Positions 18,396-56,576 of a stretch of 64,000 nt of DNA are shown here, piece by piece. Position 1 is the stretch's first letter, and the number at the start of each line of letters is the position of its first letter. The DNA is taken from IMG/VR virus record IMGVR_UViG_3300024239_000011, positions 124,001 through 188,000 of that record; one strand, 5' to 3'. A program made the translations under genes and the position numbers. The notes beneath the pieces were generated by a model. The model was not told the origin of the DNA. It searched no databases and was given only the letters and a program-made list of their open reading frames with translations.

Positions 18396-19358
18396 ATGCG
18401 CATCAAAGAAATCCTCGAAGATACATCCACATCACCATGGTACTTTGTCATTTCCAAGGATGGTATGGCCAAGGTATTCAATGAAGATGATCCCGAATAC
18501 CTGAAGCATATCTGTGATCTGGGCTGGGAAGTTGAATGGGATAGCGCCCGTAGTCCCGAGCAAGGATACCGTTTTGCCCGTGAACATGGATTGAAACCTG
18601 TTGGTCAAAAAGAAAGCCCGCTTGACAATCCGAACTTCCGTAAATGGTTCGCAGGCAGTAAGGTTGTAGACAAGAACGGTAATCCGCTTGTCGCCTACCA
18701 TGGCACGTCCCAGGATTTTGAGGCATTCAGTGTGAAACCCACCAAGAACGTTGGTCGTTATGGTTTCAACCGTATTGGGTTCTGGTTTGATACCGACCCC
18801 ACTACCCCTAATTATTTCGCGGGCGATGATGGCGATAGTATTGAAGGGCGTCAGGGTGGTGGAAACGTTATGCCGTGTTACCTGTCGATCAAACACCCAT
18901 TGGTTATTACCAGTGAGGCTTTAAGCGCACGAATGGAAGCACAGCTTCGTGATCTGTGGGCACAACATAAGGCGCTCTGGCAGAAATACAACACCGAACG
19001 TAAGGCGACCCCCACTTACGATGATAACCTTCATCGAAAATATAGTGCCCTGTCCAAGAAAATCATGGCTGAAATTGAAGATATCAAAGCTCGGCGCGGG
19101 TCGGATTCTTTCTATAAACTCATGAGCCTACTTCCCCATGGACCAAAGACCAAGGATGCCGATGTTGACCAATTTGTGGCTGACGCGAAAGCCGAGGGAT
19201 ATGACGGCATTCTGCTCAAGGATACCCTGGCAGATGACGGCTCCCGTGGTGGGAAGCTGACTGACTGGTGGTTGCCTTTCGACCCCCACCAGATCAAGTC
19301 AGTGTTCAATAAGGGCACGTGGAGTACGGAGACGCCCAAGCTCTCCGAAGGGGCTTAA
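18396..19358 (+). CDS. ADP-ribosyltransferase-like (ART-PolyVal type) late/virion protein
   Basis: FRKWFAGSKVVDKNGNPLVAYHGT, GFWF, GYDGI, FDPHQIKSVFN; late promoter at 18368. Confidence 0.7.
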   Translation: MRIKEILEDTSTSPWYFVISKDGMAKVFNEDDPEYLKHICDLGWEVEWDSARSPEQGYRFAREHGLKPVGQKESPLDNPNFRKWFAGSKVVDKNGNPLVAYHGTSQDFEAFSVKPTKNVGRYGFNRIGFWFDTDPTTPNYFAGDDGDSIEGRQGGGNVMPCYLSIKHPLVITSEALSARMEAQLRDLWAQHKALWQKYNTERKATPTYDDNLHRKYSALSKKIMAEIEDIKARRGSDSFYKLMSLLPHGPKTKDADVDQFVADAKAEGYDGILLKDTLADDGSRGGKLTDWWLPFDPHQIKSVFNKGTWSTETPKLSEGA

Positions 19359-23336: not shown

Positions 23337-24083
23337 TTATGAATATTGGTATACGCGAATTTTCTTAGTGAGGTCAAGATTATTTATCATTTCATCGGCT
23401 AATTTTGTTGAAGATAGCCTGTAGTGTGTAGCGTCCTGTTTCACAAATGGATATCCACATGCATACGAGGCGATTTCAAATGCTTTTTGAACCTCAGTAT
23501 TTTTCTGCACAAAATGCACATATGTATACCAACCTCCGTTCTTGAAGGTTTTATAAACTCCCCCATCAGTTTCAATCAAACCTTTGAGGAACATTTTAAG
23601 GTATTCGTCGGCTGAATATATCCAATCAGGGACAACAAATCCGTTTGTATTTTTGTTCCCAACTGGAAGCGCAAGAGAATTTGGCAAATCTATCCCATAA
23701 ACATAGATTTCAACACAATTCGCATTTTTGTGTTTTCTTTGTTTCGCCGTTTTTCCTGTAATTCTAGTTAATAGCGCCGTATATTCTTCAATAAGATATG
23801 GGTGTGATTGATCACATGATATGAGCAGTTTACAGGATCGTCCAGTTCGCGTCAGACATCCATCACCAGCAAAGACACCCATGAAATACGCCAAATCATT
23901 TGATCTTTCCATTAAAAGAATTTGTTCTCGTTGTTTCGCTTGACGTTTTATTGTTGGACTTATACTTGGCAAATGACGAATGTGCCATCGCACAGTGGAA
24001 GGTGCTATTCCCAAGTCTTCTGCTATTTTTCGGATACTAAATCCATGCTCACGTAATGTAATACATTTCTTACCGATTTCCAT
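23337..24083 (-). CDS. LAGLIDADG homing endonuclease with N-terminal HTH
   Basis: YFMGVFAGDGC and FLKGLIETDGG motifs. Confidence 0.88.
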   Translation of the reverse strand: MEIGKKCITLREHGFSIRKIAEDLGIAPSTVRWHIRHLPSISPTIKRQAKQREQILLMERSNDLAYFMGVFAGDGCLTRTGRSCKLLISCDQSHPYLIEEYTALLTRITGKTAKQRKHKNANCVEIYVYGIDLPNSLALPVGNKNTNGFVVPDWIYSADEYLKMFLKGLIETDGGVYKTFKNGGWYTYVHFVQKNTEVQKAFEIASYACGYPFVKQDATHYRLSSTKLADEMINNLDLTKKIRVYQYS

Positions 24084-25195: not shown

Positions 25196-25921
25196 TCAAT
25201 TTTCTGTTTGTCCGCAATAGGCTGCAATCAATTCGTCAACCAGAGCAGGCACGCCAGTAGTCGCAGTAGCATCGATCACTCGCGTGAAAACTTCATTCTC
25301 GGTCGGGATTGGATTTACCTCAATGATCTGGGCATTCCGTCTATTCATGCTTACCGCTTGCGCGAATAAACTGGCGGGCATGACTTGCCCGGATGTTCCA
25401 ATACTGATGAAAATGTCAGTATGATCTAGAGCAGGTTCGATCAGTCCCAGATGATATGGCAGTTCCCCAAACCATACAACGTCGGGACGCATCGAACCGG
25501 TCGTGCGGCATGATGGGCAAACCATGTCTACCGAAGCATCGCCGTGATGAACGAGTTTTTCCTTGCAATTGGCGCATTTGAGTTTGAGCAGTTCTCCGTG
25601 CATATGGGCAATGCTTTTAGAACCTGCCCGCTCGTGGAGGTCGTCAATGTTCTGGGTGATAATCACAAAGCCATTATTGCTAGGCCAAGCTTGCTCAAGC
25701 TTCGCTAAGGCGTAATGAGCCGCATTTGGTTCGACCGTTATTAGCTTGGCACGCCGTTCATTATAGAACCGATGTACCAATGCTGGATCGCGTTGAAATC
25801 CTTGTGGTGTGGCTACATCTTCAACTTTATGTTTTTCCCACAATCCCATACTGTCACGGAATGTAGGAATACCAGACTCGGCGCTAATACCAGCACCAGT
25901 CAAAATGACTATATTTGGCAT
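25196..25921 (-). CDS. cobB: NAD-dependent deacylase (Sir2/CobB)
   Basis: TGAGISAESGIPTFR, TQNIDDLHERAG, HMHG, RPDVVWFGE, IGTSG. Confidence 0.95.
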   Translation of the reverse strand: MPNIVILTGAGISAESGIPTFRDSMGLWEKHKVEDVATPQGFQRDPALVHRFYNERRAKLITVEPNAAHYALAKLEQAWPSNNGFVIITQNIDDLHERAGSKSIAHMHGELLKLKCANCKEKLVHHGDASVDMVCPSCRTTGSMRPDVVWFGELPYHLGLIEPALDHTDIFISIGTSGQVMPASLFAQAVSMNRRNAQIIEVNPIPTENEVFTRVIDATATTGVPALVDELIAAYCGQTEN

Positions 25922-29952: not shown

Positions 29953-30029
29953 TGGTAGGAACGGCGGGGGTCGAACCCGCAGCATCACTGGTTCTACGCC
30001 AATGTGGTCTACCGATTGCCTACGTTCCC
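29953..30029 (-). tRNA. Atypical short-arm tRNA with Leu(TAG) anticodon and G33
   Basis: Loop CGTAGAA, no variable arm, CCA. Confidence 0.75.
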
Positions 30030-31998: not shown

Positions 31999-32655
31999 TC
32001 ACCAAATCAAATCCTCGACAAAATTCATACCGGATTTCAACCCATTCTTTGGTGGATTGTATCTAACCGTGAATGTGGTTTTTCCCAGGCAACTATCTGG
32101 AAGTCTTATTACTTTGTCTATTAACGGCAAATACACCAAAATAAGATCAATTTCTGCCGCAGAATACGTCAAAACTTTTCCATTTCCATGATCAGACACA
32201 AGGTTGATTACTATACTTCCCTGTGCTTTATCAGATTTTCCGTTTGCGTATTTTACCTGAACTCGCTTTAGTTTCTCGCCATCGTCAAGCACAAAATCAT
32301 AACGAACATCGGTAGTTGGCTTACTCAATACATACCCAAGTTCAGCAGCACGTATTTGGATTTTCAACGCCGCAATTTCACCACGCAAATTAGTGGTAAG
32401 GTTTTCATGCAACGCCTTATGCTCGATCAAACCATATTGTTCGCATCGACGCTGAAAATCATCTGCATTTTTCTTATTCACCGCACGAGCATTTTCTTGC
32501 AAACGAGATTTTAGAATTTCAGCCTGCAATGGATAATCGCGAAGCCAATAACTTGCTGTGCTTTTCGACACATTCAGTTCGGCGGATATTTCTGCCAGTG
32601 ATTTATTCTGTTTACGTAATTCTATTGCTTTTTCTCGTTCCGTTATTTTTGTCAT
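31999..32655 (-). CDS. HTH plus PD-(D/E)XK homing endonuclease
   Basis: RGEIA...RYDFVLD...RVQVK. Confidence 0.85.
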   Translation of the reverse strand: MTKITEREKAIELRKQNKSLAEISAELNVSKSTASYWLRDYPLQAEILKSRLQENARAVNKKNADDFQRRCEQYGLIEHKALHENLTTNLRGEIAALKIQIRAAELGYVLSKPTTDVRYDFVLDDGEKLKRVQVKYANGKSDKAQGSIVINLVSDHGNGKVLTYSAAEIDLILVYLPLIDKVIRLPDSCLGKTTFTVRYNPPKNGLKSGMNFVEDLIW

Positions 32656-32822: not shown

Positions 32823-32908
32823 TGGTTCCGGGAGTAGGAGTCGAACCTACACAGGGCGTTCGCCCCCGCATTCAAAGTGCGGTGTCCTACCAATTAGACG
32901 ATCCCGGA
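32823..32908 (-). tRNA. tRNA-Gln(TTG) with a long variable arm
   Basis: GGGCG-AA-CGCCC variable hairpin; U1-A72, A73. Confidence 0.85.
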
Positions 32909-33085: not shown

Positions 33086-33710
33086 CTATTTCAGCGCCAA
33101 TCGCAGCCGATCAACACCGATAGCCCAACCAATACCTTCAGCGTAGCGTCCGCCACCAGCAACCTGTTTCTGGGCACCAAGCGAGGAAACCTCCACCTCG
33201 AACCCATCTTCGACGTAGTACGTCAGCCCACGTTTCACCGATTCCACGAAGGTGTATTCGACCGGCAACGCATCGAGGCATCGCCGCAACAACTCCGTGA
33301 CTTCTTCCGTGTCCGCTGGACCAGACCCGCCGAGCAGTTCGACCCCAAACTGAGTGAACTCGCGGTACCTTCCCGCTTGGGGGCGCTCGTAGCGATAGCA
33401 CCGGTTACAATAGAACAGGCGCATCGGCTTTTTAGGCTTGATCTTGCTCCATTGGTCCCGATATAGCTCCTGAACCAAGCCAGTCACTTCCGGGATCAAA
33501 CAGACTGGGCGATTGCCCTTATCGTTGAAAGCCCACATCTGGTTTACGATCTCGGGACCAGCCTTATCGATGAAGGTTTGCTGTTCCCAGATTTCCGGAA
33601 GAATTACTTCCTCGAAACCAGCTTCAGTGAACTACCCTCCGAACAGTATCGATGATCATGCGGTATTGACGAGCGTCATCGCCCATCAGGACTTGTGTGC
33701 CTCGCAACAT
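33086..33710 (-). CDS. Minimal histidyl-tRNA synthetase catalytic core, split by a +1 frameshift near 33630
   Basis: MLRGT...RRVV in frame 0 joins TEAGFEEVILP...YRYERPQAGRYREFTQFGVE...RGLTYY...AGGGRY...GWAIGVDRL in the +1 frame. Confidence 0.85.
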
Positions 33711-33735: not shown

Positions 33736-33812
33736 TGGGGTGGCTGACGGGGTACGATCCCGCAACCTTCGCAGTCACAGTGCGACGCTCTACCAATTGA
33801 GCTACAGCCACC
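33736..33812 (-). tRNA. tRNA-His(GTG) with encoded G-1:C73
   Basis: Cloverleaf, loop CTGTGAC. Confidence 0.93.
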
Positions 33813-35377: not shown

Positions 35378-35462
35378 TGGTTCCGGGTGATGGACTCGAA
35401 CCACCACAAGGTTTTCACCCACGCATTCAGAGTGCGTTGACCTACCATTAGTCGAACCCGGA
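35378..35462 (-). tRNA. tRNA-Gln(CTG) with a long variable arm
   Basis: GGGT-GAAA-ACCT variable hairpin; U1-A72, A73. Confidence 0.85.
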
Positions 35463-36624: not shown

Positions 36625-36701
36625 TGGTGGGAACGGTCGGACTCGAACCGACAGCATCTTTCTTTTTGAGAGAAAGTGGTCTACCAATTGCCTACGTTCC
36701 C
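36625..36701 (-). tRNA. Atypical short-arm tRNA-Leu(CAA)
   Basis: 6-bp anticodon stem, no variable arm, CCA. Confidence 0.8.
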
Positions 36702-37571: not shown

Positions 37572-37648
37572 TGGTGGGAACGGCGGGAGTCGAACCCGCA
37601 GCATCACATATGCTGAGTATGTGTGGTCTACCAGTTGCCTACGTTCCC
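37572..37648 (-). tRNA. Atypical short-arm tRNA-Leu(CAG)
   Basis: Same body as the 36625 copy, loop CTCAGCA. Confidence 0.8.
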
Positions 37649-37937: not shown

Positions 37938-38014
37938 TGGTGGGGACAGCGGGACTCGAACCCGCAGCATCACTGGTTCTTAGCCAATGTGGTCTACCAA
38001 TTGCCTATATCCCC
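37938..38014 (-). tRNA. Atypical short-arm tRNA-Leu(AAG)
   Basis: Loop CTAAGAA, A34, no variable arm. Confidence 0.8.
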
Positions 38015-38024
38015 GTCTTAAGTT

Positions 38025-38103
38025 TGGGGTGATGAGCCGGATTCGAACCGCGCACCTTCGCTTTCACAGAGCGATATGCAGACACCGCCACACCATCATC
38101 ACC
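38025..38103 (-). tRNA. tRNA-His(GTG) with G-1:C73 and a bulged T stem
   Basis: Loop CTGTGAA, CCA. Confidence 0.82.
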
Positions 38104-42593: not shown

Positions 42594-43286
42594 TTAATCT
42601 ACATACCGGGCGGGGAATACCTTCGCCCACTTATCCGGGTCGTAAAATTCCCCCGCAATGGATGCCTCGAACATTTCCATCCGAACCTTCAGCATTTCTG
42701 CTGTCGGCATCGGCGGAAATAACGAGATCGGTTTGAGATCGGTCCATTTAGCCCGTCCACGCCCTTGGCGGCATGAAACCGCATATTCGTTCGTCCCATC
42801 CCGACGTTGGATGCGGTTGATCTGATAGATGGTCGTAAACGGGTTGTCTTCTGGCTCAAAAGAGAACAATTTTGACTCGACAACCTTCCGGAGGCTTTCA
42901 GGCATCAGGAGGACACTACCCGCCACATTTTCCCAATACTCACCCACCGGGGAGATCACGCACAAATGTTGCTTCTTGAACCAGTAGGACCGTGCCTTGG
43001 CTTGGGAAGCTGGATCATTCTTCTTGAACATCGCGGCGACAATGTTCTGAACGTGGTCATTTTCAAACCCGTAAGTCCGCAAACTCGGGATCGCTACTCG
43101 CACATCACGCTTTTCGATGTCTTTGAAAGGTAGATCGAAAAACATGTATTGTTGCCAGATTTCCGCATTGGAGAACTGCCGAATAGTGAACTCCATGTTT
43201 TCACCTTCCGGAAACTCCGCGAGACGAATCAGCCACTCGAAAGTGGATGGATCATAGGGGTTTGGGGAGTTGATCCATGTTTTCAT
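42594..43286 (-). CDS. Hypothetical protein coupled to aspS
   Basis: 4-nt overlap with the aspS stop. Confidence 0.65.
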   Translation of the reverse strand: MKTWINSPNPYDPSTFEWLIRLAEFPEGENMEFTIRQFSNAEIWQQYMFFDLPFKDIEKRDVRVAIPSLRTYGFENDHVQNIVAAMFKKNDPASQAKARSYWFKKQHLCVISPVGEYWENVAGSVLLMPESLRKVVESKLFSFEPEDNPFTTIYQINRIQRRDGTNEYAVSCRQGRGRAKWTDLKPISLFPPMPTAEMLKVRMEMFEASIAGEFYDPDKWAKVFPARYVD

Positions 43287-45151
43287 TTCGCGGTCACCTT
43301 GATGTGAAGTTCCTTCAACTGTTCCGGGGTGACTTCAGAGGGTGCGCCCATCATCAAGTCCTGCGCCGAGTTGTTCATCGGGAACGCCACGATCTCGCGG
43401 ATGTTCGGCTCATTCGCCAACAACATCACCATGCGGTCGATACCAGGGGCGATACCACCGTGCGGTGGTGCGCCGTAGCGGAAAGCATTGTAGAGCGCCG
43501 GGAATTTAGTCTGAACCACTGCCGGGTCATACCCAGCAATCTCAAACGCCTTCTCCATCACGTCGATGCGGTGGTTACGGATGGCGCCCGACGACAGTTC
43601 CACGCCGTTGCACACCAAGTCGTATTGATGTGCTTTGATGGTCAGCGGGTCTTGGTTCAACAACGCATCCATCCCACCCTGCGGCATCGAGAACGGGTTG
43701 TGGCTGAATTCGACCTTGCCCGTTTCCTCGTTCAATTCGAACATGGGGAAATCCACGATCCAGCAGAACTGGAAGGATTCCTCATCGTAGTTGTCCGACC
43801 GCTTGGCAGCTTCGACACGCAGCTTGCTTGCCCACTGATACGCCTCTTTCTTCGGACCAGCAATGAACATATATGATGCATCCGGTTTTTCAAATTGAGC
43901 GCATGTAGTTTCATCCATGAAATCCACGGCGATGGACCACATCTGCTCGTCGGTGAAAAACTTTTCCATCGGACCAGAAACGCCGGTCAGCACATGCGGC
44001 TCCGTGCGCGCGTGCGACAACGATTCTTTCCAATCTGTGATCTTGAAGTAGCCAAGACCGGGCATACCCAAATCCTTGGCATAGTTATCCATGTCCTTGT
44101 GCCATTTACCCGTCAGCTTTCCAGCGTCGGCATATACCGGGATGCACAACACAACACCGTTCTTATCGATGACTTCCTGAAGGAACGGTGGCGCATTCGG
44201 TGCAACAACCTCCGTAACATCACGGATATAGATGTTGTCGTCCACACGCAGATCGGGTTTGTCGTTACCAAACAATTGGATAGAAGCATCATAGGTGTAG
44301 GTTCGCCATTCCGGGTTGACGTACCAGTTGGATGTGGGTCCGCAATAACTGACTGAGGTGAATTCCTCGAACACCCGCGATACTACATCCTTGACAACGC
44401 CGAACACCTCTTCTTGGGTAGCAAATGCCATTTCCATGTCAAGCTGGTAGAACTCACCCGGCGACCGGTCAGAACGCCCAGCTTCATCGCGGAAGCACGG
44501 GGCAATCTGAAAGTACCGCTGCACCCCTGAACACATCAGAATTTGCTTGAAAATCTGCGGAGCCTGGGGCAGCGCGTAGAATTTACCGGGATGCAAACGG
44601 GCAGGCACCAAATAATCACGGGCGCCTTCCGGACTAGAAGCCGTCAGAATGGGCGTCTGAATTTCCATGAAGTCCTGGCGTACCATTTCGTTGCGCAGCA
44701 TCCAAATCACGTCGGAACGCAGTTTGAGGTTCTGCTGCATTTTCGGGCGGCGAAGATCGAGGTACCGATACCGCAGGCGAGCTTCGTCCGATGCAGTGAA
44801 ATCTTCATCGTGCAGCGTGAACGGAAGTACCGCCGCCTGATTGAAGATTTCAAACTCTTCCACGACCAGTTCATATTTGCCAACGAACCCGAGTTTTTCG
44901 TTGGTAGTGCCTTCCGGGCGCAGACGCGGCGTTCCGCGAACTTCCACACAGCTTTCTTCACGAATCTTTGCCAGGGCGGCAATGTTCGGGTTGTTGGCAT
45001 CAAGCGCACACTGCATTACGCCATCGTAGTCACGGATGTCCACGAACAACAACCCGCCGTGGTCGCGCACTCGGTGAACCCAACCGCGTAAGGCAACCTT
45101 CTGTCCAACTGAACATGAACCGGGTGAACCAATCGGATAGACGATGTACAT
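43283..45151 (-). CDS. aspS: Aspartyl-tRNA synthetase, probably non-discriminating
   Basis: RDHGG, RLRYRYLDLRR, YALPQAPQ, QIAPCFRDE, GAPPHGGIAPGIDR. Confidence 0.96.
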   Translation of the reverse strand: MYIVYPIGSPGSCSVGQKVALRGWVHRVRDHGGLLFVDIRDYDGVMQCALDANNPNIAALAKIREESCVEVRGTPRLRPEGTTNEKLGFVGKYELVVEEFEIFNQAAVLPFTLHDEDFTASDEARLRYRYLDLRRPKMQQNLKLRSDVIWMLRNEMVRQDFMEIQTPILTASSPEGARDYLVPARLHPGKFYALPQAPQIFKQILMCSGVQRYFQIAPCFRDEAGRSDRSPGEFYQLDMEMAFATQEEVFGVVKDVVSRVFEEFTSVSYCGPTSNWYVNPEWRTYTYDASIQLFGNDKPDLRVDDNIYIRDVTEVVAPNAPPFLQEVIDKNGVVLCIPVYADAGKLTGKWHKDMDNYAKDLGMPGLGYFKITDWKESLSHARTEPHVLTGVSGPMEKFFTDEQMWSIAVDFMDETTCAQFEKPDASYMFIAGPKKEAYQWASKLRVEAAKRSDNYDEESFQFCWIVDFPMFELNEETGKVEFSHNPFSMPQGGMDALLNQDPLTIKAHQYDLVCNGVELSSGAIRNHRIDVMEKAFEIAGYDPAVVQTKFPALYNAFRYGAPPHGGIAPGIDRMVMLLANEPNIREIVAFPMNNSAQDLMMGAPSEVTPEQLKELHIKVTAK

Positions 45152-48433: not shown

Positions 48434-48508
48434 TGGTGCGCCCTGCTGGATTTGAACCAACGACCCTTACTACGTCAAAGTAATGCTCTACCCCTGAGCT
48501 AAGGGCGC
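48434..48508 (-). tRNA. tRNA-Val(GAC)
   Basis: Cloverleaf, loop TTGACGT, CCA. Confidence 0.93.
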
Positions 48509-50133: not shown

Positions 50134-50287
50134 TGCTATTCGCCATTATGATCCTTTAAAATTAGCCGCATCGCTGGGAGCATGCATTGAATATTCAATG
50201 CTCAAACGCGGCTTTGTTGTTGTTAATTGCCAGTAAACCGCATTTGTGCTAAATAGGTATATACAGAGTATATACCGAGGTCGATCC

Positions 50288-51874
50288 ATGCCAGTATGTT
50301 GCCAAATTTGCGGACAAGAATTTACCAAACAAATTACCAATAGCCATCTTAAGCGTCATAGCATCACCACCGCTGATTATAAGAAGCAATTTGGGGATGA
50401 TTCTCTTTCGTCCCCTGAATACCGCGAACAGAAACGGCAAGCCATATCTGGTTCAAACAACCCGATGTTTGGGCGATCTCAAACCGAGGAATCGCGCCGA
50501 GTGATGTCGGAACGACGGTCTGGGAAACCTGCCCATAATAAGGGCGCGGTGCTTACCGACGCGCAAAAAGATAAACTTCGTGTTCTTGCCCTTGAGCGAA
50601 ATGCTCAATGGGCAGAAAATGGTGATCATCCATTATTGGGGCGCAAGCATTCAGACGAAACGAAAGAACTGATACGTCAGAAACGGGCAGAACAAATTAT
50701 TAGCTCGGAGGCATGTCAACGAGCAGCAATAACTCGCAAGGAACGCGGTTATCAGGCTCCAATGCTTGGCAAGCATCATAGTGAAGAAACAAAAGCTAAA
50801 ATTCTCGTTTCTATGACGGGGTATAGACAAAAAGTAAAAGAACGCACACACCAGAAACGCTTAGACGCAATAGCCAGCTTGAATCTACGATTGATTGATC
50901 ATGATGATCATTTTATGCATTTGGAATGTCTTTGTTGCGGGCATCATTTTCATCGAACCCCACAAGTATTTGATCCATGTCGCATACGTGTAGATATGTG
51001 CGATGTTTGTCATCCTAAAATTAATTACACGAGCAAAGCAGAAACCGAAATTTGTGAATATATAAAGGGATTGCTACCAGATATCGAAGTACGTTCTCGT
51101 GACAAATATGTAATCGGTCGCGGCGAACTAGATATCTATATCCCATCGATGCGTCTTGCCATCGAGTATAACGGTCTGTATTGGCATTCCGAAATTGCTG
51201 GCAAAAGCCGCGATTACCACCTTAACAAATTAGAAAAATGTACCAAAAAAGGGATACGCCTAATTACCATTTTCGAGGATGAATATATGGAAAAACCGCA
51301 TATTGTGCGGAGTAGATTGGCGTCACTTCTTGGAAAAAGTGCCTTTGTTCTTGGTGCGAGAGAATGTGATATCGTTGAGCTATCATCGGCAGAAGCGAAT
51401 TCATTTCTTAAAGAACACCATATCCAAGGCTCGGGTCGAAGCAATGTACGTTATGGTTTAATGTATGATAACGAATTGCTATCCGTAATGACATTTAGTA
51501 AAGATAATTTGTCTCGAAAAATTAATGATTGGGAACTGAATAGATTTGCGTCTAAAACCGACTGGAATATTGCCGGTGCTGCATCTAGACTATTCAAACG
51601 ATTTATTCGCGATCATAATCCTAAACAAATCGTCACATATGCCGACAAACGATGGTCAGAGGGCAACCTATACCATCATCTTGGATTTGTGATGTCGAGA
51701 GACACCGAACCAAATTATTGGTACATTGATGGGTTACGAAGAATTCACCGTTTTGCTCTTCGTAAAAACGACCAAGATGATCCAAATATGACTGAATGGG
51801 AAAATAGAAAAGCACAGGGCTGGAATAGAATCTGGGATTGCGGAAGTATTCGTTTCGATTGGAACGCCATTTAA
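50288..51874 (+). CDS. Hef-like (Vsr-type) homing endonuclease with NUMOD3 repeats
   Basis: NPMFGR/KHSEETK repeats; ELDIYIP..LAIEYNGLYWH; IFEDE; RIWDCG. Confidence 0.85.
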   Translation: MPVCCQICGQEFTKQITNSHLKRHSITTADYKKQFGDDSLSSPEYREQKRQAISGSNNPMFGRSQTEESRRVMSERRSGKPAHNKGAVLTDAQKDKLRVLALERNAQWAENGDHPLLGRKHSDETKELIRQKRAEQIISSEACQRAAITRKERGYQAPMLGKHHSEETKAKILVSMTGYRQKVKERTHQKRLDAIASLNLRLIDHDDHFMHLECLCCGHHFHRTPQVFDPCRIRVDMCDVCHPKINYTSKAETEICEYIKGLLPDIEVRSRDKYVIGRGELDIYIPSMRLAIEYNGLYWHSEIAGKSRDYHLNKLEKCTKKGIRLITIFEDEYMEKPHIVRSRLASLLGKSAFVLGARECDIVELSSAEANSFLKEHHIQGSGRSNVRYGLMYDNELLSVMTFSKDNLSRKINDWELNRFASKTDWNIAGAASRLFKRFIRDHNPKQIVTYADKRWSEGNLYHHLGFVMSRDTEPNYWYIDGLRRIHRFALRKNDQDDPNMTEWENRKAQGWNRIWDCGSIRFDWNAI

Positions 51875-55421: not shown

Positions 55422-56576
55422 TCAGCGACTTATTTGAATGAAGGTTTTAATTCGCGGGGCTACAAGGTCGCGGAACCGTTTTCCGTTGAAAATGCCATAA
55501 TGTCCCACACCTTCAACCATGTAATGGTCACGGTACGGAACATTCGGGCACAAATCGTGTGCTGCCATAGTCTGTCCAACCCCCGTAATATCGTCCTTCT
55601 CGCCCTCAATTGTCATGAGGCAAGTCTTTGAAATCATTGATGGTTTTATCAGTTGATCATGACAGACCATCGTCCCCTGTGGTAACTGATGTTCTTGGAA
55701 TACCATCTTGATGGTTTCCAAATAGAACTTCGCATCCAAGTCCATTACAGCAAGGTATTCATCATAGAATTTCTCATGATGGGCGGCGCTCTCACCATCA
55801 CCGCTGACCAAATTATCAAAATATTCGCGATGTGCTTTTACATGCCGATCAAGGTTCATTGACATAAATCCAGCAAGTTGGAGAAAGCCAGGATATACCC
55901 TGCGTCCATGTCCTTTCTTTCCCATCGAAACTGGGTAAATTAAATTCTGTTCAAACCATGAATATGGGCGTGTTGTTGCCAGTTCATCGACTTCAGTTGG
56001 GTTAATACGTGTATCAATTGGTCCACCCATAAGGGTCATGGATTTAGGGGTTGGTTCATCGTTCGCCGCGAGAAGCGACACGGCTGCTATCACCGGTACG
56101 GAAGGCTGACATACTGCAACGAGGTGGACATTCCCGTTGAAGTATCGAATGAAGTCCATTAGGTACGTGACATAATCATCGAACCCAAAAACACCATCCT
56201 CAAGAGGAACTGCCCCCGCATCTCGCCAATCAGTGATGTAGACATTGTGATCCGGAAGGAACTCCTTCACTGTTCCCCGCAATAATGTTGCGTAATGCCC
56301 AGACATAGGAGCTACCACAAGCACATTAGGACGCCCCGCGTCCACCTCTGCAAACTGCAAAAGGTCACAGAACGGTTTAGTCAGAACATCCGTCTCCGCG
56401 ACCCCCAAATCGAATTCCGGGCGGGTATAACTGTTCGTGGAACGTTGGACCAGTTTGTTTAGGGCGTACCATTCACGGGCAAAGGGAACCGATTGTGCCA
56501 AATTGGCATTCACCGTTGCTGCAAAATTTACATGAGAACGAATAACGTTGCTTATAGAATAAAAATTATAGAGCAT
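55422..56576 (-). CDS. phaZ: Intracellular polyhydroxyalkanoate (PHB) depolymerase
   Basis: VAPMSGHYATLLR, AVCQP catalytic Cys, YPGFLQL, EGEKDDI, VGHYGIFNG. Confidence 0.93.
   Translation of the reverse strand: MLYNFYSISNVIRSHVNFAATVNANLAQSVPFAREWYALNKLVQRSTNSYTRPEFDLGVAETDVLTKPFCDLLQFAEVDAGRPNVLVVAPMSGHYATLLRGTVKEFLPDHNVYITDWRDAGAVPLEDGVFGFDDYVTYLMDFIRYFNGNVHLVAVCQPSVPVIAAVSLLAANDEPTPKSMTLMGGPIDTRINPTEVDELATTRPYSWFEQNLIYPVSMGKKGHGRRVYPGFLQLAGFMSMNLDRHVKAHREYFDNLVSGDGESAAHHEKFYDEYLAVMDLDAKFYLETIKMVFQEHQLPQGTMVCHDQLIKPSMISKTCLMTIEGEKDDITGVGQTMAAHDLCPNVPYRDHYMVEGVGHYGIFNGKRFRDLVAPRIKTFIQISR

What the first reader, a model, noticed from the sequence alone, without database searches (positions are those of the whole stretch)
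33620..33645. prfB-like +1 frameshift with a His codon in the A site: His-tRNA-sensing autoregulation of HisRS
Seen (minus strand): C-GGAGG-GTA-GTT-CAC-TGA-A. Frame 0 stops after 28 aa, and the +1 frame continues the HisRS alignment. The layout is internal SD, 3-nt spacer, P-site codon, sensing codon, as in prfB (AGGGGG-TAT-CTT-TGA). Inference: when His-tRNA is scarce, tRNA-Val(GAC) (encoded at 48434) slips from GUU to UUC and full HisRS is made; otherwise translation ends at UGA.
Basis: partly seen in the sequence, partly recalled or inferred. Interest (0 to 1): 0.85.

Follow-up and report, generated by a model that had tools for sequence, protein, structure and literature searches.

The report
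His-codon frameshift switch in mini-HisRS
A small phage histidyl-tRNA synthetase gene can only be read through a +1 ribosome slip placed exactly at a histidine codon, a layout kept in dozens of phages and bacteria, so the enzyme is probably made only when charged histidine tRNA runs short.

Summary
On the minus strand, ATG 33710 opens a 28-codon frame that ends GGAGG-GTA-GTT-CAC-TGA. The +1 frame has a TAG just before TTC and then runs 181 codons with a clear HisRS match. Only GTT or CAC can therefore be the shift point.

Comparative data support a programmed shift:
- All 32 distinct related loci that need a +1 shift carry [C/G]TT-CAY at the junction. They include Sinorhizobium phage Phosso, huge-phage contigs, and the chromosomes of Pseudomonas syringae B728a and Paraburkholderia.
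- The heptamer sits at three different places in the protein, on separate branches of the tree.
- Both pieces are under purifying selection in their own frames.
- An SD-like element about 3 nt upstream is strongly enriched.
- The +1 codon after TTC is only Ile or Thr (77 of 77), which keeps CAU/CAC in frame 0. Unbroken homologs vary freely at that position.
- 31 of 32 shifted products contain no histidine, so the sensor codon is the only His codon the ribosome meets.

The product is a roughly 208-aa HisRS core without the insertion and anticodon-binding domains, next to tRNA-His. Dependence on His-tRNA and enzyme activity are inferred, not tested. I found no precedent in the searched literature.

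The parts
33736..33811 (-). tRNA-His(GTG), 25 nt upstream of the start codon. G-1 is encoded at 33812, the discriminator is C73 and CCA is encoded.
   Evidence: ARAGORN and sequence read. tRNA-His lies within about 1.5 kb of the gene in most phage loci.
33624..33710 (-). Frame-0 ORF: 27 codons of the HisRS N-terminus (helix 1), then the His sensor codon and TGA.
   Evidence: dN/dS is 0.24 in this frame, and the other two frames carry stops in 12 of 13 homologs. It aligns to residues 6-32 of T. thermophilus HisRS through the unbroken homolog L014. In the AF2 model of an unbroken homolog, residues 10-29 form a helix with pLDDT 96-98.
33636..33640 (-). Internal Shine-Dalgarno-like GGAGG, 3 nt before the P-site codon.
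   Evidence: Duplex with the 16S tail is -10.0 kcal/mol. 12 of 17 sites reach -6 kcal/mol or lower, against 8.4% of background windows. 60 of 77 database relatives read GG or EV here in the non-coding +1 frame, which corresponds to GGNGGN or GAGGT.
33630..33632 (-). P-site slip codon GTT (CTT in most relatives). It re-pairs on TTC (33629-33631).
   Evidence: [C/G]TT is invariant in all shifted loci.
33627..33629 (-). A-site sensor codon CAC (His).
   Evidence: CAY is found in every shifted locus and at all three site positions. It is the only His codon on the translated path.
33624..33626 (-). Frame-0 stop TGA, directly after the His codon.
   Evidence: The stop is adjacent in about 60% of loci and 1-12 codons later in the rest.
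33632..33634 (-). TAG in the +1 frame. It closes the shift window on the 5' side and excludes any frame change upstream of it.
33086..33628 (-). +1-frame body of the mini-HisRS, from ACT to TAG (180 codons plus stop). It holds motifs 1-3 and the HisA/HisB motifs.
   Evidence: Pfam and NCBIfam hits. dN/dS is 0.08. Invariant catalytic columns appear in alignment A1.
48434..48508 (-). tRNA-Val(GAC), a candidate P-site tRNA for GUU.
   Evidence: ARAGORN. Its role is inferred.
38025..38102 (-). Second tRNA-His(GTG) copy.
   Evidence: ARAGORN.

Best explanation
The gene encodes a roughly 208-aa minimal histidyl-tRNA synthetase, made only by a programmed +1 ribosomal frameshift.

Proposed mechanism:
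1. Ribosomes start at ATG 33710 and translate 27 codons.
2. [quoted passage not shown] The internal GGAGG, 3 nt upstream, pairs with the 16S rRNA tail.
3. If His-tRNA(His) is plentiful, CAC is decoded, the next codon is UGA, and a 28-aa peptide is released.
4. If His-tRNA(His) is scarce, the A site stays empty. The P-site tRNA slips from GUU to UUC (CUU to UUC in most relatives), ACU is read next, and the full enzyme is made (junction ...RRVV-TEAGF...).
5. The enzyme recharges tRNA-His and so shuts off its own synthesis.

Shown here: the two-frame anatomy, its conservation, its independent origins, selection in both frames, enrichment of the SD-like element, and the absence of His from the products.

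Inferred: the slip itself, its dependence on His-tRNA level, and the enzyme's activity.
For: 1. The shift window is only two codons, bounded by a +1-frame TAG and a frame-0 TGA.
2. All 32 distinct shifted homologs have [C/G]TT-CAY at the junction. They include phage Phosso, many 400-600 kb viral contigs, and the chromosomes of P. syringae B728a, P. cerasi and Paraburkholderia.
3. The same heptamer marks three different positions in the protein: residues 19/20, 27/28 and 71/72 in the numbering of unbroken homolog P0005. They lie in separate clades. Site C is nested (support 100/100) among unbroken genes.
4. At site C, the product of a P-site slip reproduces the conserved CLIPE motif exactly.
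5. dN/dS is 0.24 for the N piece and 0.08 for the C piece, each in its own frame.
6. The SD-like element is strongly enriched. All GTT sites have a strong one, and the sites without one all use CTT.
7. In 77 of 77 database relatives the +1 codon after Phe is Ile or Thr, which keeps CAU or CAC in frame 0. Unbroken homologs show T, F, R, N, M, K, V, I or L there.
8. 31 of 32 shifted products contain no His, against 2.7% His in the window's other long ORFs and about 2 His per unbroken homolog.
9. A scan of 294 kb for SD-[C/G]TT-NNN with the frameshift architecture, leaving the A-site codon free, returned the HisRS sites plus only one other hit.
10. The product is a HisRS core. The best PDB sequence match is T. 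thermophilus HisRS at 5e-35, and the model's TM-score to HisRS structures is 0.85-0.88.
11. Published kinetics of +1 frameshifting name the same three promoters: a hungry A-site codon, a slippery P-site codon and an upstream SD (PMC2377451).
Against: - There are no experimental data. Frameshift efficiency and its response to His-tRNA are unknown.
- CAY is not a rare codon, so the pause must come from low charging alone.
- tRNA-Val(GAC) re-pairs on UUC at only 2 of 3 positions.
- Several relatives (L013, L017, L018, L006, L022) lack a good SD-like element.
- The whole family is His-poor, including some unbroken members. The link between shift and zero His is significant only without phylogenetic correction (Fisher p = 2e-4). 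The independent-pairs test has only 4 pairs.
- The enzyme lacks an anticodon-binding domain, and NCBI names the bacterial copies as HisZ, so its activity is unproven.
- Part of the CAY signal is forced by the C needed for UUC re-pairing.
Confidence: 0.7

Rival explanations
1. The +1 frameshift is real and programmed but constitutive. It sets a fixed low yield of enzyme, or makes two products, and the His codon is a by-product of the C needed for UUC re-pairing and of a preferred AUY/ACU codon in the new frame.
For: The C of CAY is also the third base of UUC. The +1 A-site codon is always Ile or Thr, which could itself be selected for fast capture of the new frame. CAY is not rare: His makes up 2.7% of residues in the window's ORFs.
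Against: Three independent sites in a HisRS gene all place a His codon in the A site. Ile-to-Thr changes that keep CAY are the only ones tolerated, while unbroken homologs vary freely at that position. The products are cleared of every other His codon, which serves no purpose under constitutive shifting.
Confidence: 0.15
2. The frame change happens after His is decoded, or through a special tRNA that reads four bases (CUUC/GUUC). The product would then carry His at the junction, or the shift would depend on a phage tRNA rather than on a hungry codon.
For: The length of the product is the same under either model. These phages carry large and unusual tRNA sets, including tRNAs with 6-nt anticodon loops in L003, L009 and L024.
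Against: ARAGORN reported no tRNA with a 4-base anticodon in the window or the flanks. The bacterial chromosomal copies have no tRNA genes within the fetched flanks of about 1.5 kb. tRNA-His cannot re-pair on AUU or ACU. At site C the slip model gives CLIPE, as in homologs, while the post-His model gives CLHPE, and H is never seen in that column. The invariant xUU would be left unexplained.
Confidence: 0.05
3. The gene is split. The 28-aa peptide and a separately initiated C-terminal protein are both made, by termination-reinitiation using the SD-like element as a ribosome-binding site, and then assemble.
For: In most relatives an SD-like element lies 7-8 nt before an AUU or AUC codon that overlaps the stop. 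AUU can act as a start codon.
Against: In the window and 12 of 77 relatives that codon is ACN (Thr), which is not a start codon. In the window the first ATG, GTG or TTG in the +1 frame lies 31 codons downstream, which would remove motif 1. About 40% of loci have the frame-0 stop 1-12 codons further on. The cut would fall inside helix 1 of the fold.
Confidence: 0.04
4. It is a dead gene or an assembly error: a one-base indel with no function.
For: A single locus on its own cannot exclude this. Truncated, apparently decayed copies do exist (L052, L053).
Against: The same break with the same heptamer appears in 32 distinct sequences, including finished isolate genomes (CP000075.1, PV764938.1) at down to about 50% identity. 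Both frames are under purifying selection, and there are three independent positions.
Confidence: 0.02
5. RNA polymerase slips on the G run and restores the frame in a share of transcripts.
For: Several relatives have GGGGG upstream of the site.
Against: The window has only GGAGGG, and the +1-frame TAG lies downstream of it, so a change at the G run would hit a stop at once. Many loci have no run at all (L013, L017, L018, L022). Known slippage needs longer homopolymers.
Confidence: 0.01

Closest known systems
prfB (release factor 2) autoregulatory +1 frameshift, AGGGGG-UAU-CUU-UGA-C
   Same: Both have an internal SD-like element 3 nt upstream and a CUU-type P-site slip onto UUN. In both, the frame-0 ORF is short and the gene body lies in +1. 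The logic is also shared: the gene's own product speeds decoding of the A-site codon and so prevents the shift. L004 even reads AGGGGG-TCT-CTT.
   Different: Here the A site holds a sense codon (His) read by an aminoacyl-tRNA, not a stop read by the protein itself, so feedback is one step removed. The UGA lies one codon later and is dispensable. The site has arisen at several positions in the gene.
Hungry-codon and Ty1-type +1 frameshifting (CUU-AGG-C; Gallant's starvation-induced shifts)
   Same: Both use a P-site tRNA-Leu slip from CUU while a slowly decoded sense codon waits in the A site, with no downstream structure needed (PMC5009743; PMC2377451). CUU-CAU-C has the same form as CUU-AGG-C.
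   Different: Ty1 relies on a constitutively rare tRNA and gives a fixed ratio of products. Here the codon is common, and scarcity would be conditional and tied to the function of the gene product. A bacterial SD stimulator is added.
His-tRNA sensing by the his operon leader (attenuation) and the T-box riboswitches of hisS
   Same: The same signal, the charging level of tRNA-His, controls histidine-related genes, and cognate codons act as the sensor.
   Different: Those systems act on transcription termination through RNA structure. This one acts during elongation by a change of frame inside the coding sequence.
Bacterial HisRS catalytic domain, designed N-terminal fragments and HisRS urzymes (PMC3060492)
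   Same: Motifs 1-3 and the His-specific motifs are present. TM-score to E. coli and T. thermophilus HisRS is 0.85-0.88. Engineered minimal fragments are reported to activate histidine (abstract of PMC3060492).
   Different: This is a natural protein of about 208 aa in which the insertion domain is cleanly deleted and there is no anticodon-binding domain. It contains no histidine. Its activity is untested.

Membership tests
prfB-type autoregulatory +1 PRF | Internal SD-like element about 3 nt 5' of the shift codon | tested here: met
   The window reads GGAGG-GTA-GTT, with a duplex energy of -10.0 kcal/mol. 12 of 17 sites reach -6 or lower against 8.4% of background. 60 of 77 database relatives show it.
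prfB-type autoregulatory +1 PRF | P-site CUU able to re-pair on the overlapping +1 codon | tested here: met
   CTT or GTT followed by C occurs in all shifted loci, and the +1 codon is always TTC. The window uses GTT, which pairs at 2 of 3 positions.
prfB-type autoregulatory +1 PRF | In-frame UGA stop codon in the A site at the moment of the shift | tested here: not met
   The A-site codon is CAC or CAU (His). UGA follows one codon later in about 60% of loci and 1-12 codons later in the others.
prfB-type autoregulatory +1 PRF | The gene product accelerates decoding of the A-site codon (negative feedback) | not testable with these tools
   Inferred from the HisRS homology and the His codon. It needs a reporter assay.
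Hungry-codon (Ty1-like) +1 PRF | A sense codon in the A site whose aminoacyl-tRNA is limiting | tested here: inconclusive
   The sense codon is present. It is not rare (His is 2.7% of residues), so any limitation would be conditional. The His-free products fit translation under His-tRNA shortage.
Hungry-codon (Ty1-like) +1 PRF | No need for a downstream RNA structure | tested here: met
   The consensus fold of 14 loci has an energy of -0.22 kcal/mol with no covariation. The window fold has a z-score of -1.3.
Histidyl-tRNA synthetase (class IIa) | Class II motifs 1-3 and the His-specific motifs (LxPExT, RGLxYY, GGGRY) | tested here: met
   These are invariant columns in A1 and A3. Pfam PF13393 matches at 2.5e-20. 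hisS scores 133 bits against 82 for hisZ. PDB entry 1adj matches at 5e-35.
Histidyl-tRNA synthetase (class IIa) | Insertion domain and C-terminal anticodon-binding domain | tested here: not met
   The product is about 208 aa. The alignment to T. thermophilus HisRS skips residues 157-249 and ends near residue 320. The hisS score is below the equivalog cutoff of 286.75.
Histidyl-tRNA synthetase (class IIa) | Charges tRNA-His with histidine | not testable with these tools
   There is only context: tRNA-His with G-1:C73 lies 25 nt upstream, and tRNA-His is near the gene in most phage loci.
HisZ (ATP phosphoribosyltransferase regulatory subunit) | Best match to HisZ models at full length (about 314-390 aa) | tested here: not met
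   The hisZ HMM scores 82 bits against a cutoff of 271.65, and below hisS. NCBI nevertheless gives this name to the bacterial +1-frame ORFs.

The most novel reading that the evidence does not exclude
A widespread class of histidine-free emergency HisRS enzymes in huge phages and in Pseudomonas and Burkholderiales chromosomes is switched on by a +1 ribosomal frameshift whose sensor is the enzyme's own cognate codon. This would be the first case of an aminoacyl-tRNA synthetase autoregulated by recoding, and the first natural sense-codon counterpart of the prfB circuit. It would have evolved repeatedly through one-base insertions that create CUU-C-AUY.
Probability: 0.6. Interest if true: 0.9.

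Novelty: new variant of a known kind. Interest (0 to 1): 0.86.

Why it matters
- It would add a new way for cells and viruses to sense tRNA charging: directly on the elongating ribosome, inside the coding sequence of the enzyme that repairs the shortage.
- It would be a natural use of hungry-codon frameshifting, which has so far been known mainly as a starvation artefact or, in Ty1, as a fixed-ratio device.
- It would correct the annotation of hundreds of genes. The P. syringae copies are filed as 193-aa HisZ-like proteins called from the +1 frame alone.
- It points to a natural minimal HisRS of about 208 aa, which bears on ideas about ancestral synthetases (urzymes).
- It offers a compact, tunable sensor of amino-acid charging for synthetic biology.
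- It may also explain why huge phages place synthetase genes inside tRNA arrays.

Tried and rejected
- **Downstream RNA stimulator.** The consensus fold of 14 loci and the fold of the window show nothing conserved.
- **Other shift sites in the window.** STTCAYTGA occurs 8 times against 2.6 expected. Only the HisRS site has both an SD-like element and a homology-supported two-frame gene. The four other hits that passed a loose frame filter were not followed up. A wider scan with a free A-site codon over 294 kb gave one unrelated hit.
- **Other synthetases.** The window's AspRS (43283-45151, minus strand) is full-length and unbroken, so the shift is not a general trait of this phage's synthetase genes.
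- **Four-base-decoding tRNA.** ARAGORN reported none.
- **Phylogenetically corrected test of shift against zero His.** Only 4 independent pairs are available (2-3 in the expected direction, 0 against), so the test is underpowered.
- **Stop-codon reassignment.** This is rejected. Frame 0 after the TGA has no homology and carries further stops of all three kinds, and there is no suppressor tRNA.
- **Literature.** Nine full-text searches and four papers read gave no report of a frameshifted HisRS or of any synthetase controlled by recoding. The GeneTack 'tRNA synthetase' cluster is classed there as phase variation and only 1% of it is bridged by BLASTP. I judged it unrelated. Subscription journals were not searchable.

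Full report
**1. The observation**

All coordinates in this section are on the minus strand. ATG 33710 opens a frame that reads MLRGTQVLMGDDARQYRMIIDTVRRVVH and stops at TGA 33626-33624. The last bases are GGAGG (33640-33636), GTA, GTT (33632-33630), CAC (33629-33627) and TGA.

The +1 frame carries TAG at 33634-33632. It is then open from TTC (33631) for 181 codons, to TAG 33088-33086. The two frames therefore overlap in only two codons, GTT and CAC.

The downstream piece matches Pfam tRNA-synt_His at 2.5e-20 and NCBIfam hisS at 9.6e-39, ahead of hisZ at 3.4e-23. The 14-nt pattern GGAGGNNNSTTCAY occurs once in the window, against 0.09 expected.

tRNA-His(GTG) lies 25 nt upstream, at 33736-33811, with G-1 and C73 encoded.

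The window is part of a 543-kb viral contig, IMGVR_UViG_3300024239_000011. It carries 27 tRNA genes, a tail sheath gene and an intact full-length AspRS.

**2. The same break elsewhere**

Sinorhizobium phage Phosso (PV764938.1, 469 kb) has a collinear homolog at 69% nucleotide identity with no indel relative to the window. Frame 0 there reads MLRGTRVISGNEARAYTNAIDTLRGCLHRS and stops. The annotated 'histidyl-tRNA synthetase' is only the +1-frame ORF.

Scans of viral, metagenome and genome collections gave many more loci. Every locus that needs a +1 shift and whose junction can be read, 32 distinct sequences in all, has [C/G]TT-CAY in frame 0 at the junction and TTC in the +1 frame.

These loci include bacterial chromosomes: Pseudomonas cerasi, Pseudomonas sp. 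Au-Pse12, two Paraburkholderia species, and Burkholderiales and Polyangiaceae MAGs. The finished genome of P. syringae pv. syringae B728a is also among them. It reads ...CGG-AGC-TAT-CTT-CAT-CGA.... In the P. syringae group NCBI names the 193-aa +1-frame ORF 'ATP phosphoribosyltransferase regulatory subunit'.

A protein search found about 2300 short relatives. Of the 120 closest clusters, 104 lack the N-terminal xRGT motif and begin with out-of-frame residues. Gene callers had therefore taken them from the +1 frame.

**3. Three independent positions**

Most loci carry the heptamer at site A, between residues 27 and 28 in the numbering of the unbroken homolog P0005.

- **Site B.** L023, L024 and L046 carry CTT-CAT-C eight codons earlier, between residues 19 and 20.
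- **Site C.** L022 carries it between residues 71 and 72, inside the near-invariant CLIPE motif.

On a maximum-likelihood tree, site C is nested among unbroken genes with 100/100 support. Site B lies in a distant clade. Site A is spread through a large clade with unbroken members interspersed.

At site C, reading CTT, skipping C and then reading ATC-CCT-GAA gives C-L-I-P-E, exactly as in the unbroken neighbours. This fixes the skipped base and favours a P-site slip in which the His codon is not decoded.

As a rough estimate of my own, the chance that a random frame junction shows [CG]TT-CAY in frame is about 1e-3 per codon pair. That gives roughly 1e-2 per junction once the uncertainty in position is allowed for, and about 1e-6 for three junctions.

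**4. Not a pseudogene**

Among site-A loci, dN/dS is 0.24 for the 27-codon N piece in frame 0. The other two frames of that stretch contain stops in 12 of 13 sequences. dN/dS is 0.08 for the C piece in the +1 frame.

An AlphaFold model of an unbroken homolog has mean pLDDT 92.1. Residues 10-29 form the first helix of the fold, so the N piece is an integral part of the enzyme.

**5. Stimulators**

Pairing of the 11 nt upstream of the P-site codon with the 16S tail reaches -6 kcal/mol or lower at 12 of 17 sites, against 8.4% of windows in the same genes. No set of random windows reached the observed mean in 100,000 draws.

All seven GTT sites have a strong SD-like element (-9.3 or lower). The sites that lack one all use CTT, the better re-pairing codon.

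In 60 of 77 database relatives the non-coding +1 reading of this stretch is Gly-Gly or Glu-Val, which corresponds to GGNGGN or GAGGT.

No conserved downstream RNA structure exists.

**6. Is the His codon the point?**

Four lines of evidence say yes.

- **All three independent sites use CAY**, in a gene for a HisRS homolog.
- **The residue after Phe is constrained.** In 77 of 77 relatives it is Ile or Thr: 59 Ile, 12 Thr, and 6 first scored as Phe by a regex offset on FFI, which on inspection are Ile. Ile and Thr codons are the ones that put AU or AC after the C and so keep CAU or CAC in frame 0. Unbroken homologs show T, F, R, N, M, K, V, I or L at the same position.
- **The products lack histidine.** The conceptual products of 31 of 32 shifted genes contain no His, and the remaining one has a single His. 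The window's other long ORFs have 2.7% His, and unbroken homologs average about 2 His each. The sensor codon is therefore the only His codon a ribosome meets on this mRNA, which is what one expects of a protein that must be made when His-tRNA is missing.
- **The architecture is specific.** A scan of 294 kb of phage sequence for the SD, slip codon and two-frame layout, with the A-site codon left free, recovered the HisRS sites and one unrelated hit.

Two caveats apply. The family as a whole is His-poor. The association of shift with zero His is significant only without phylogenetic correction (Fisher p = 2e-4). The independent-pairs test has only four pairs, 2-3 in the expected direction and none against.

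**7. What the protein is**

The closest solved relatives are bona fide HisRS enzymes. T. thermophilus 1adj matches at 5e-35 by sequence, and the model's TM-score to E. coli, T. thermophilus and A. baumannii HisRS is 0.85-0.88.

Motifs 1-3, LIPEVT, RGLTYY and GGGRY are conserved. The insertion domain (about residues 157-249 of the T. thermophilus enzyme) and the anticodon-binding domain are absent.

In phages the gene usually sits in a tRNA array within about 1.5 kb of tRNA-His, often directly beside it. The bacterial copies have no tRNA genes within the fetched flanks of about 1.5 kb.

From my own knowledge, HisRS identity rests mainly on G-1 and C73, and an engineered N-terminal catalytic fragment of E. 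coli HisRS keeps some activity. HisRS urzymes are reported to activate histidine (abstract of PMC3060492). Activity of this natural core is plausible but untested.

**8. Mechanism**

The layout matches the three promoters of +1 frameshifting set out for E. coli: a hungry A-site codon, a P-site tRNA able to re-pair in +1, and an upstream SD-like element (PMC2377451; PMC5009743).

tRNA-Leu(GAG) pairs with CUU and with UUC about equally well. tRNA-Val(GAC) keeps two of its three pairs on UUC. These pairing statements are inference.

When His-tRNA is abundant, the ribosome decodes CAY and terminates 0-12 codons later. When it is scarce, the slip wins and the enzyme is made. This is the logic of prfB with a sense codon as the sensor.

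**9. Rivals**

- **Constitutive shifting** cannot be excluded without an experiment, but it explains neither the repeated choice of His nor the His-free products.
- **A post-His shift or a four-base-reading tRNA** is disfavoured by site C, by the invariant xUU, and by the absence of such tRNAs in ARAGORN output.
- **Reinitiation** fails for the window and for 12 of 77 relatives, where the candidate start codon is ACN.
- **Transcriptional slippage at the G run** is excluded in the window by the TAG that follows it.
- **Sequencing error or pseudogene** is excluded by sections 2-4.

**10. Novelty**

Nine full-text searches and four papers read gave no report of a frameshifted HisRS or of any synthetase controlled by recoding. 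The papers were a comprehensive 2016 recoding review, the GeneTack survey, a kinetic model of +1 frameshifting and a 2022 review of synthetase paralogs. Subscription journals were not searchable.

I rate it a new variant of a known kind. It is prfB-like and hungry-codon +1 frameshifting put to a new use, with a new sensor. It is widespread and experimentally tractable in P. syringae B728a and in the Phosso / S. meliloti pair.

Noticed in passing
window 29953-30029, 36625-36701, 37572-37648, 37938-38014 (all minus strand): Four near-identical 77-nt tRNAs have a class I shape (no long variable arm, A73) but carry Leu anticodons (tag, caa, cag, aag). They differ mainly in the anticodon stem-loop. 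Normal long-arm tRNA-Leu genes are also present, so tRNA body and anticodon look mismatched.
   Followed up: partly
window 32823-32908 and 35378-35462 (minus strand): Two tRNAs have a long variable arm (class II shape, 85-86 nt, A73) but carry Gln anticodons (ttg, ctg). Ordinary 74-77-nt tRNA-Gln genes sit alongside them. These may be tRNAs with swapped identity.
   Followed up: partly
window 7582-48508: The 27 tRNA genes are nearly all for Leu, Pro, Gln and His (codons starting with C, plus UUR), with a few for Ser, Tyr and Val. The array looks sorted by codon box.
   Followed up: no
window 23337-24083, 31999-32655, 50246-51874: Homing-endonuclease-like genes are interspersed in the tRNA region: LAGLIDADG with HTH, PD-(D/E)XK with HTH directly downstream of the mini-HisRS, and a NUMOD3 protein.
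   Followed up: partly
window 43283-45151 (minus strand): A full-length, unbroken class II AspRS (622 aa, with OB anticodon-binding and GAD domains). It contrasts with the truncated, frameshifted HisRS.
   Followed up: partly
window 18396-19358, 25196-25921, 55422-56576, 1079-2125: Auxiliary genes that are unusual in a phage: an ART-PolyVal ADP-ribosyltransferase, a SIR2-family protein, a protein with a PHB depolymerase C-terminal domain, and an AI-2E family transporter.
   Followed up: no
window, 8 sites (14426, 16113, 17548, 18478, 22210, 33624, 36399, 55854): STTCAYTGA occurs 8 times against 2.6 expected, and no shuffle out of 100 reached 8. Apart from the HisRS site, none combined an SD-like element with a homology-supported two-frame gene.
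   Followed up: partly
L003:1185-1257, L009:2197-2279, L024:5385-5452: ARAGORN reports tRNA-like genes with two-base anticodons (6-nt anticodon loops) in the tRNA arrays of related huge phages.
   Followed up: no
L199:3947-4582 (P. syringae B728a, CP000075.1) and L118-L122: Chromosomal copies of the shifted mini-HisRS occur in the P. syringae group and in Paraburkholderia, between a GNAT acetyltransferase gene and a metallophosphoesterase gene. No tRNA genes lie within the fetched flanks. NCBI annotates only the +1-frame ORF, as a HisZ-like protein.
   Followed up: partly
P0083 and P0071 (protein clusters): P0083 is an unbroken close relative that reads LRGVFISAGY across the site and looks like a one-base revertant. 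P0071 changes frame much earlier, after MLRGTRMLMG. Both suggest repeated switching between shifted and unbroken states.
   Followed up: no
L022:3544-3720: The only site-C locus has two tRNA-Leu(GAG) genes directly downstream of the mini-HisRS. This tRNA would occupy the P site on CUU. The placement may be coincidence.
   Followed up: no
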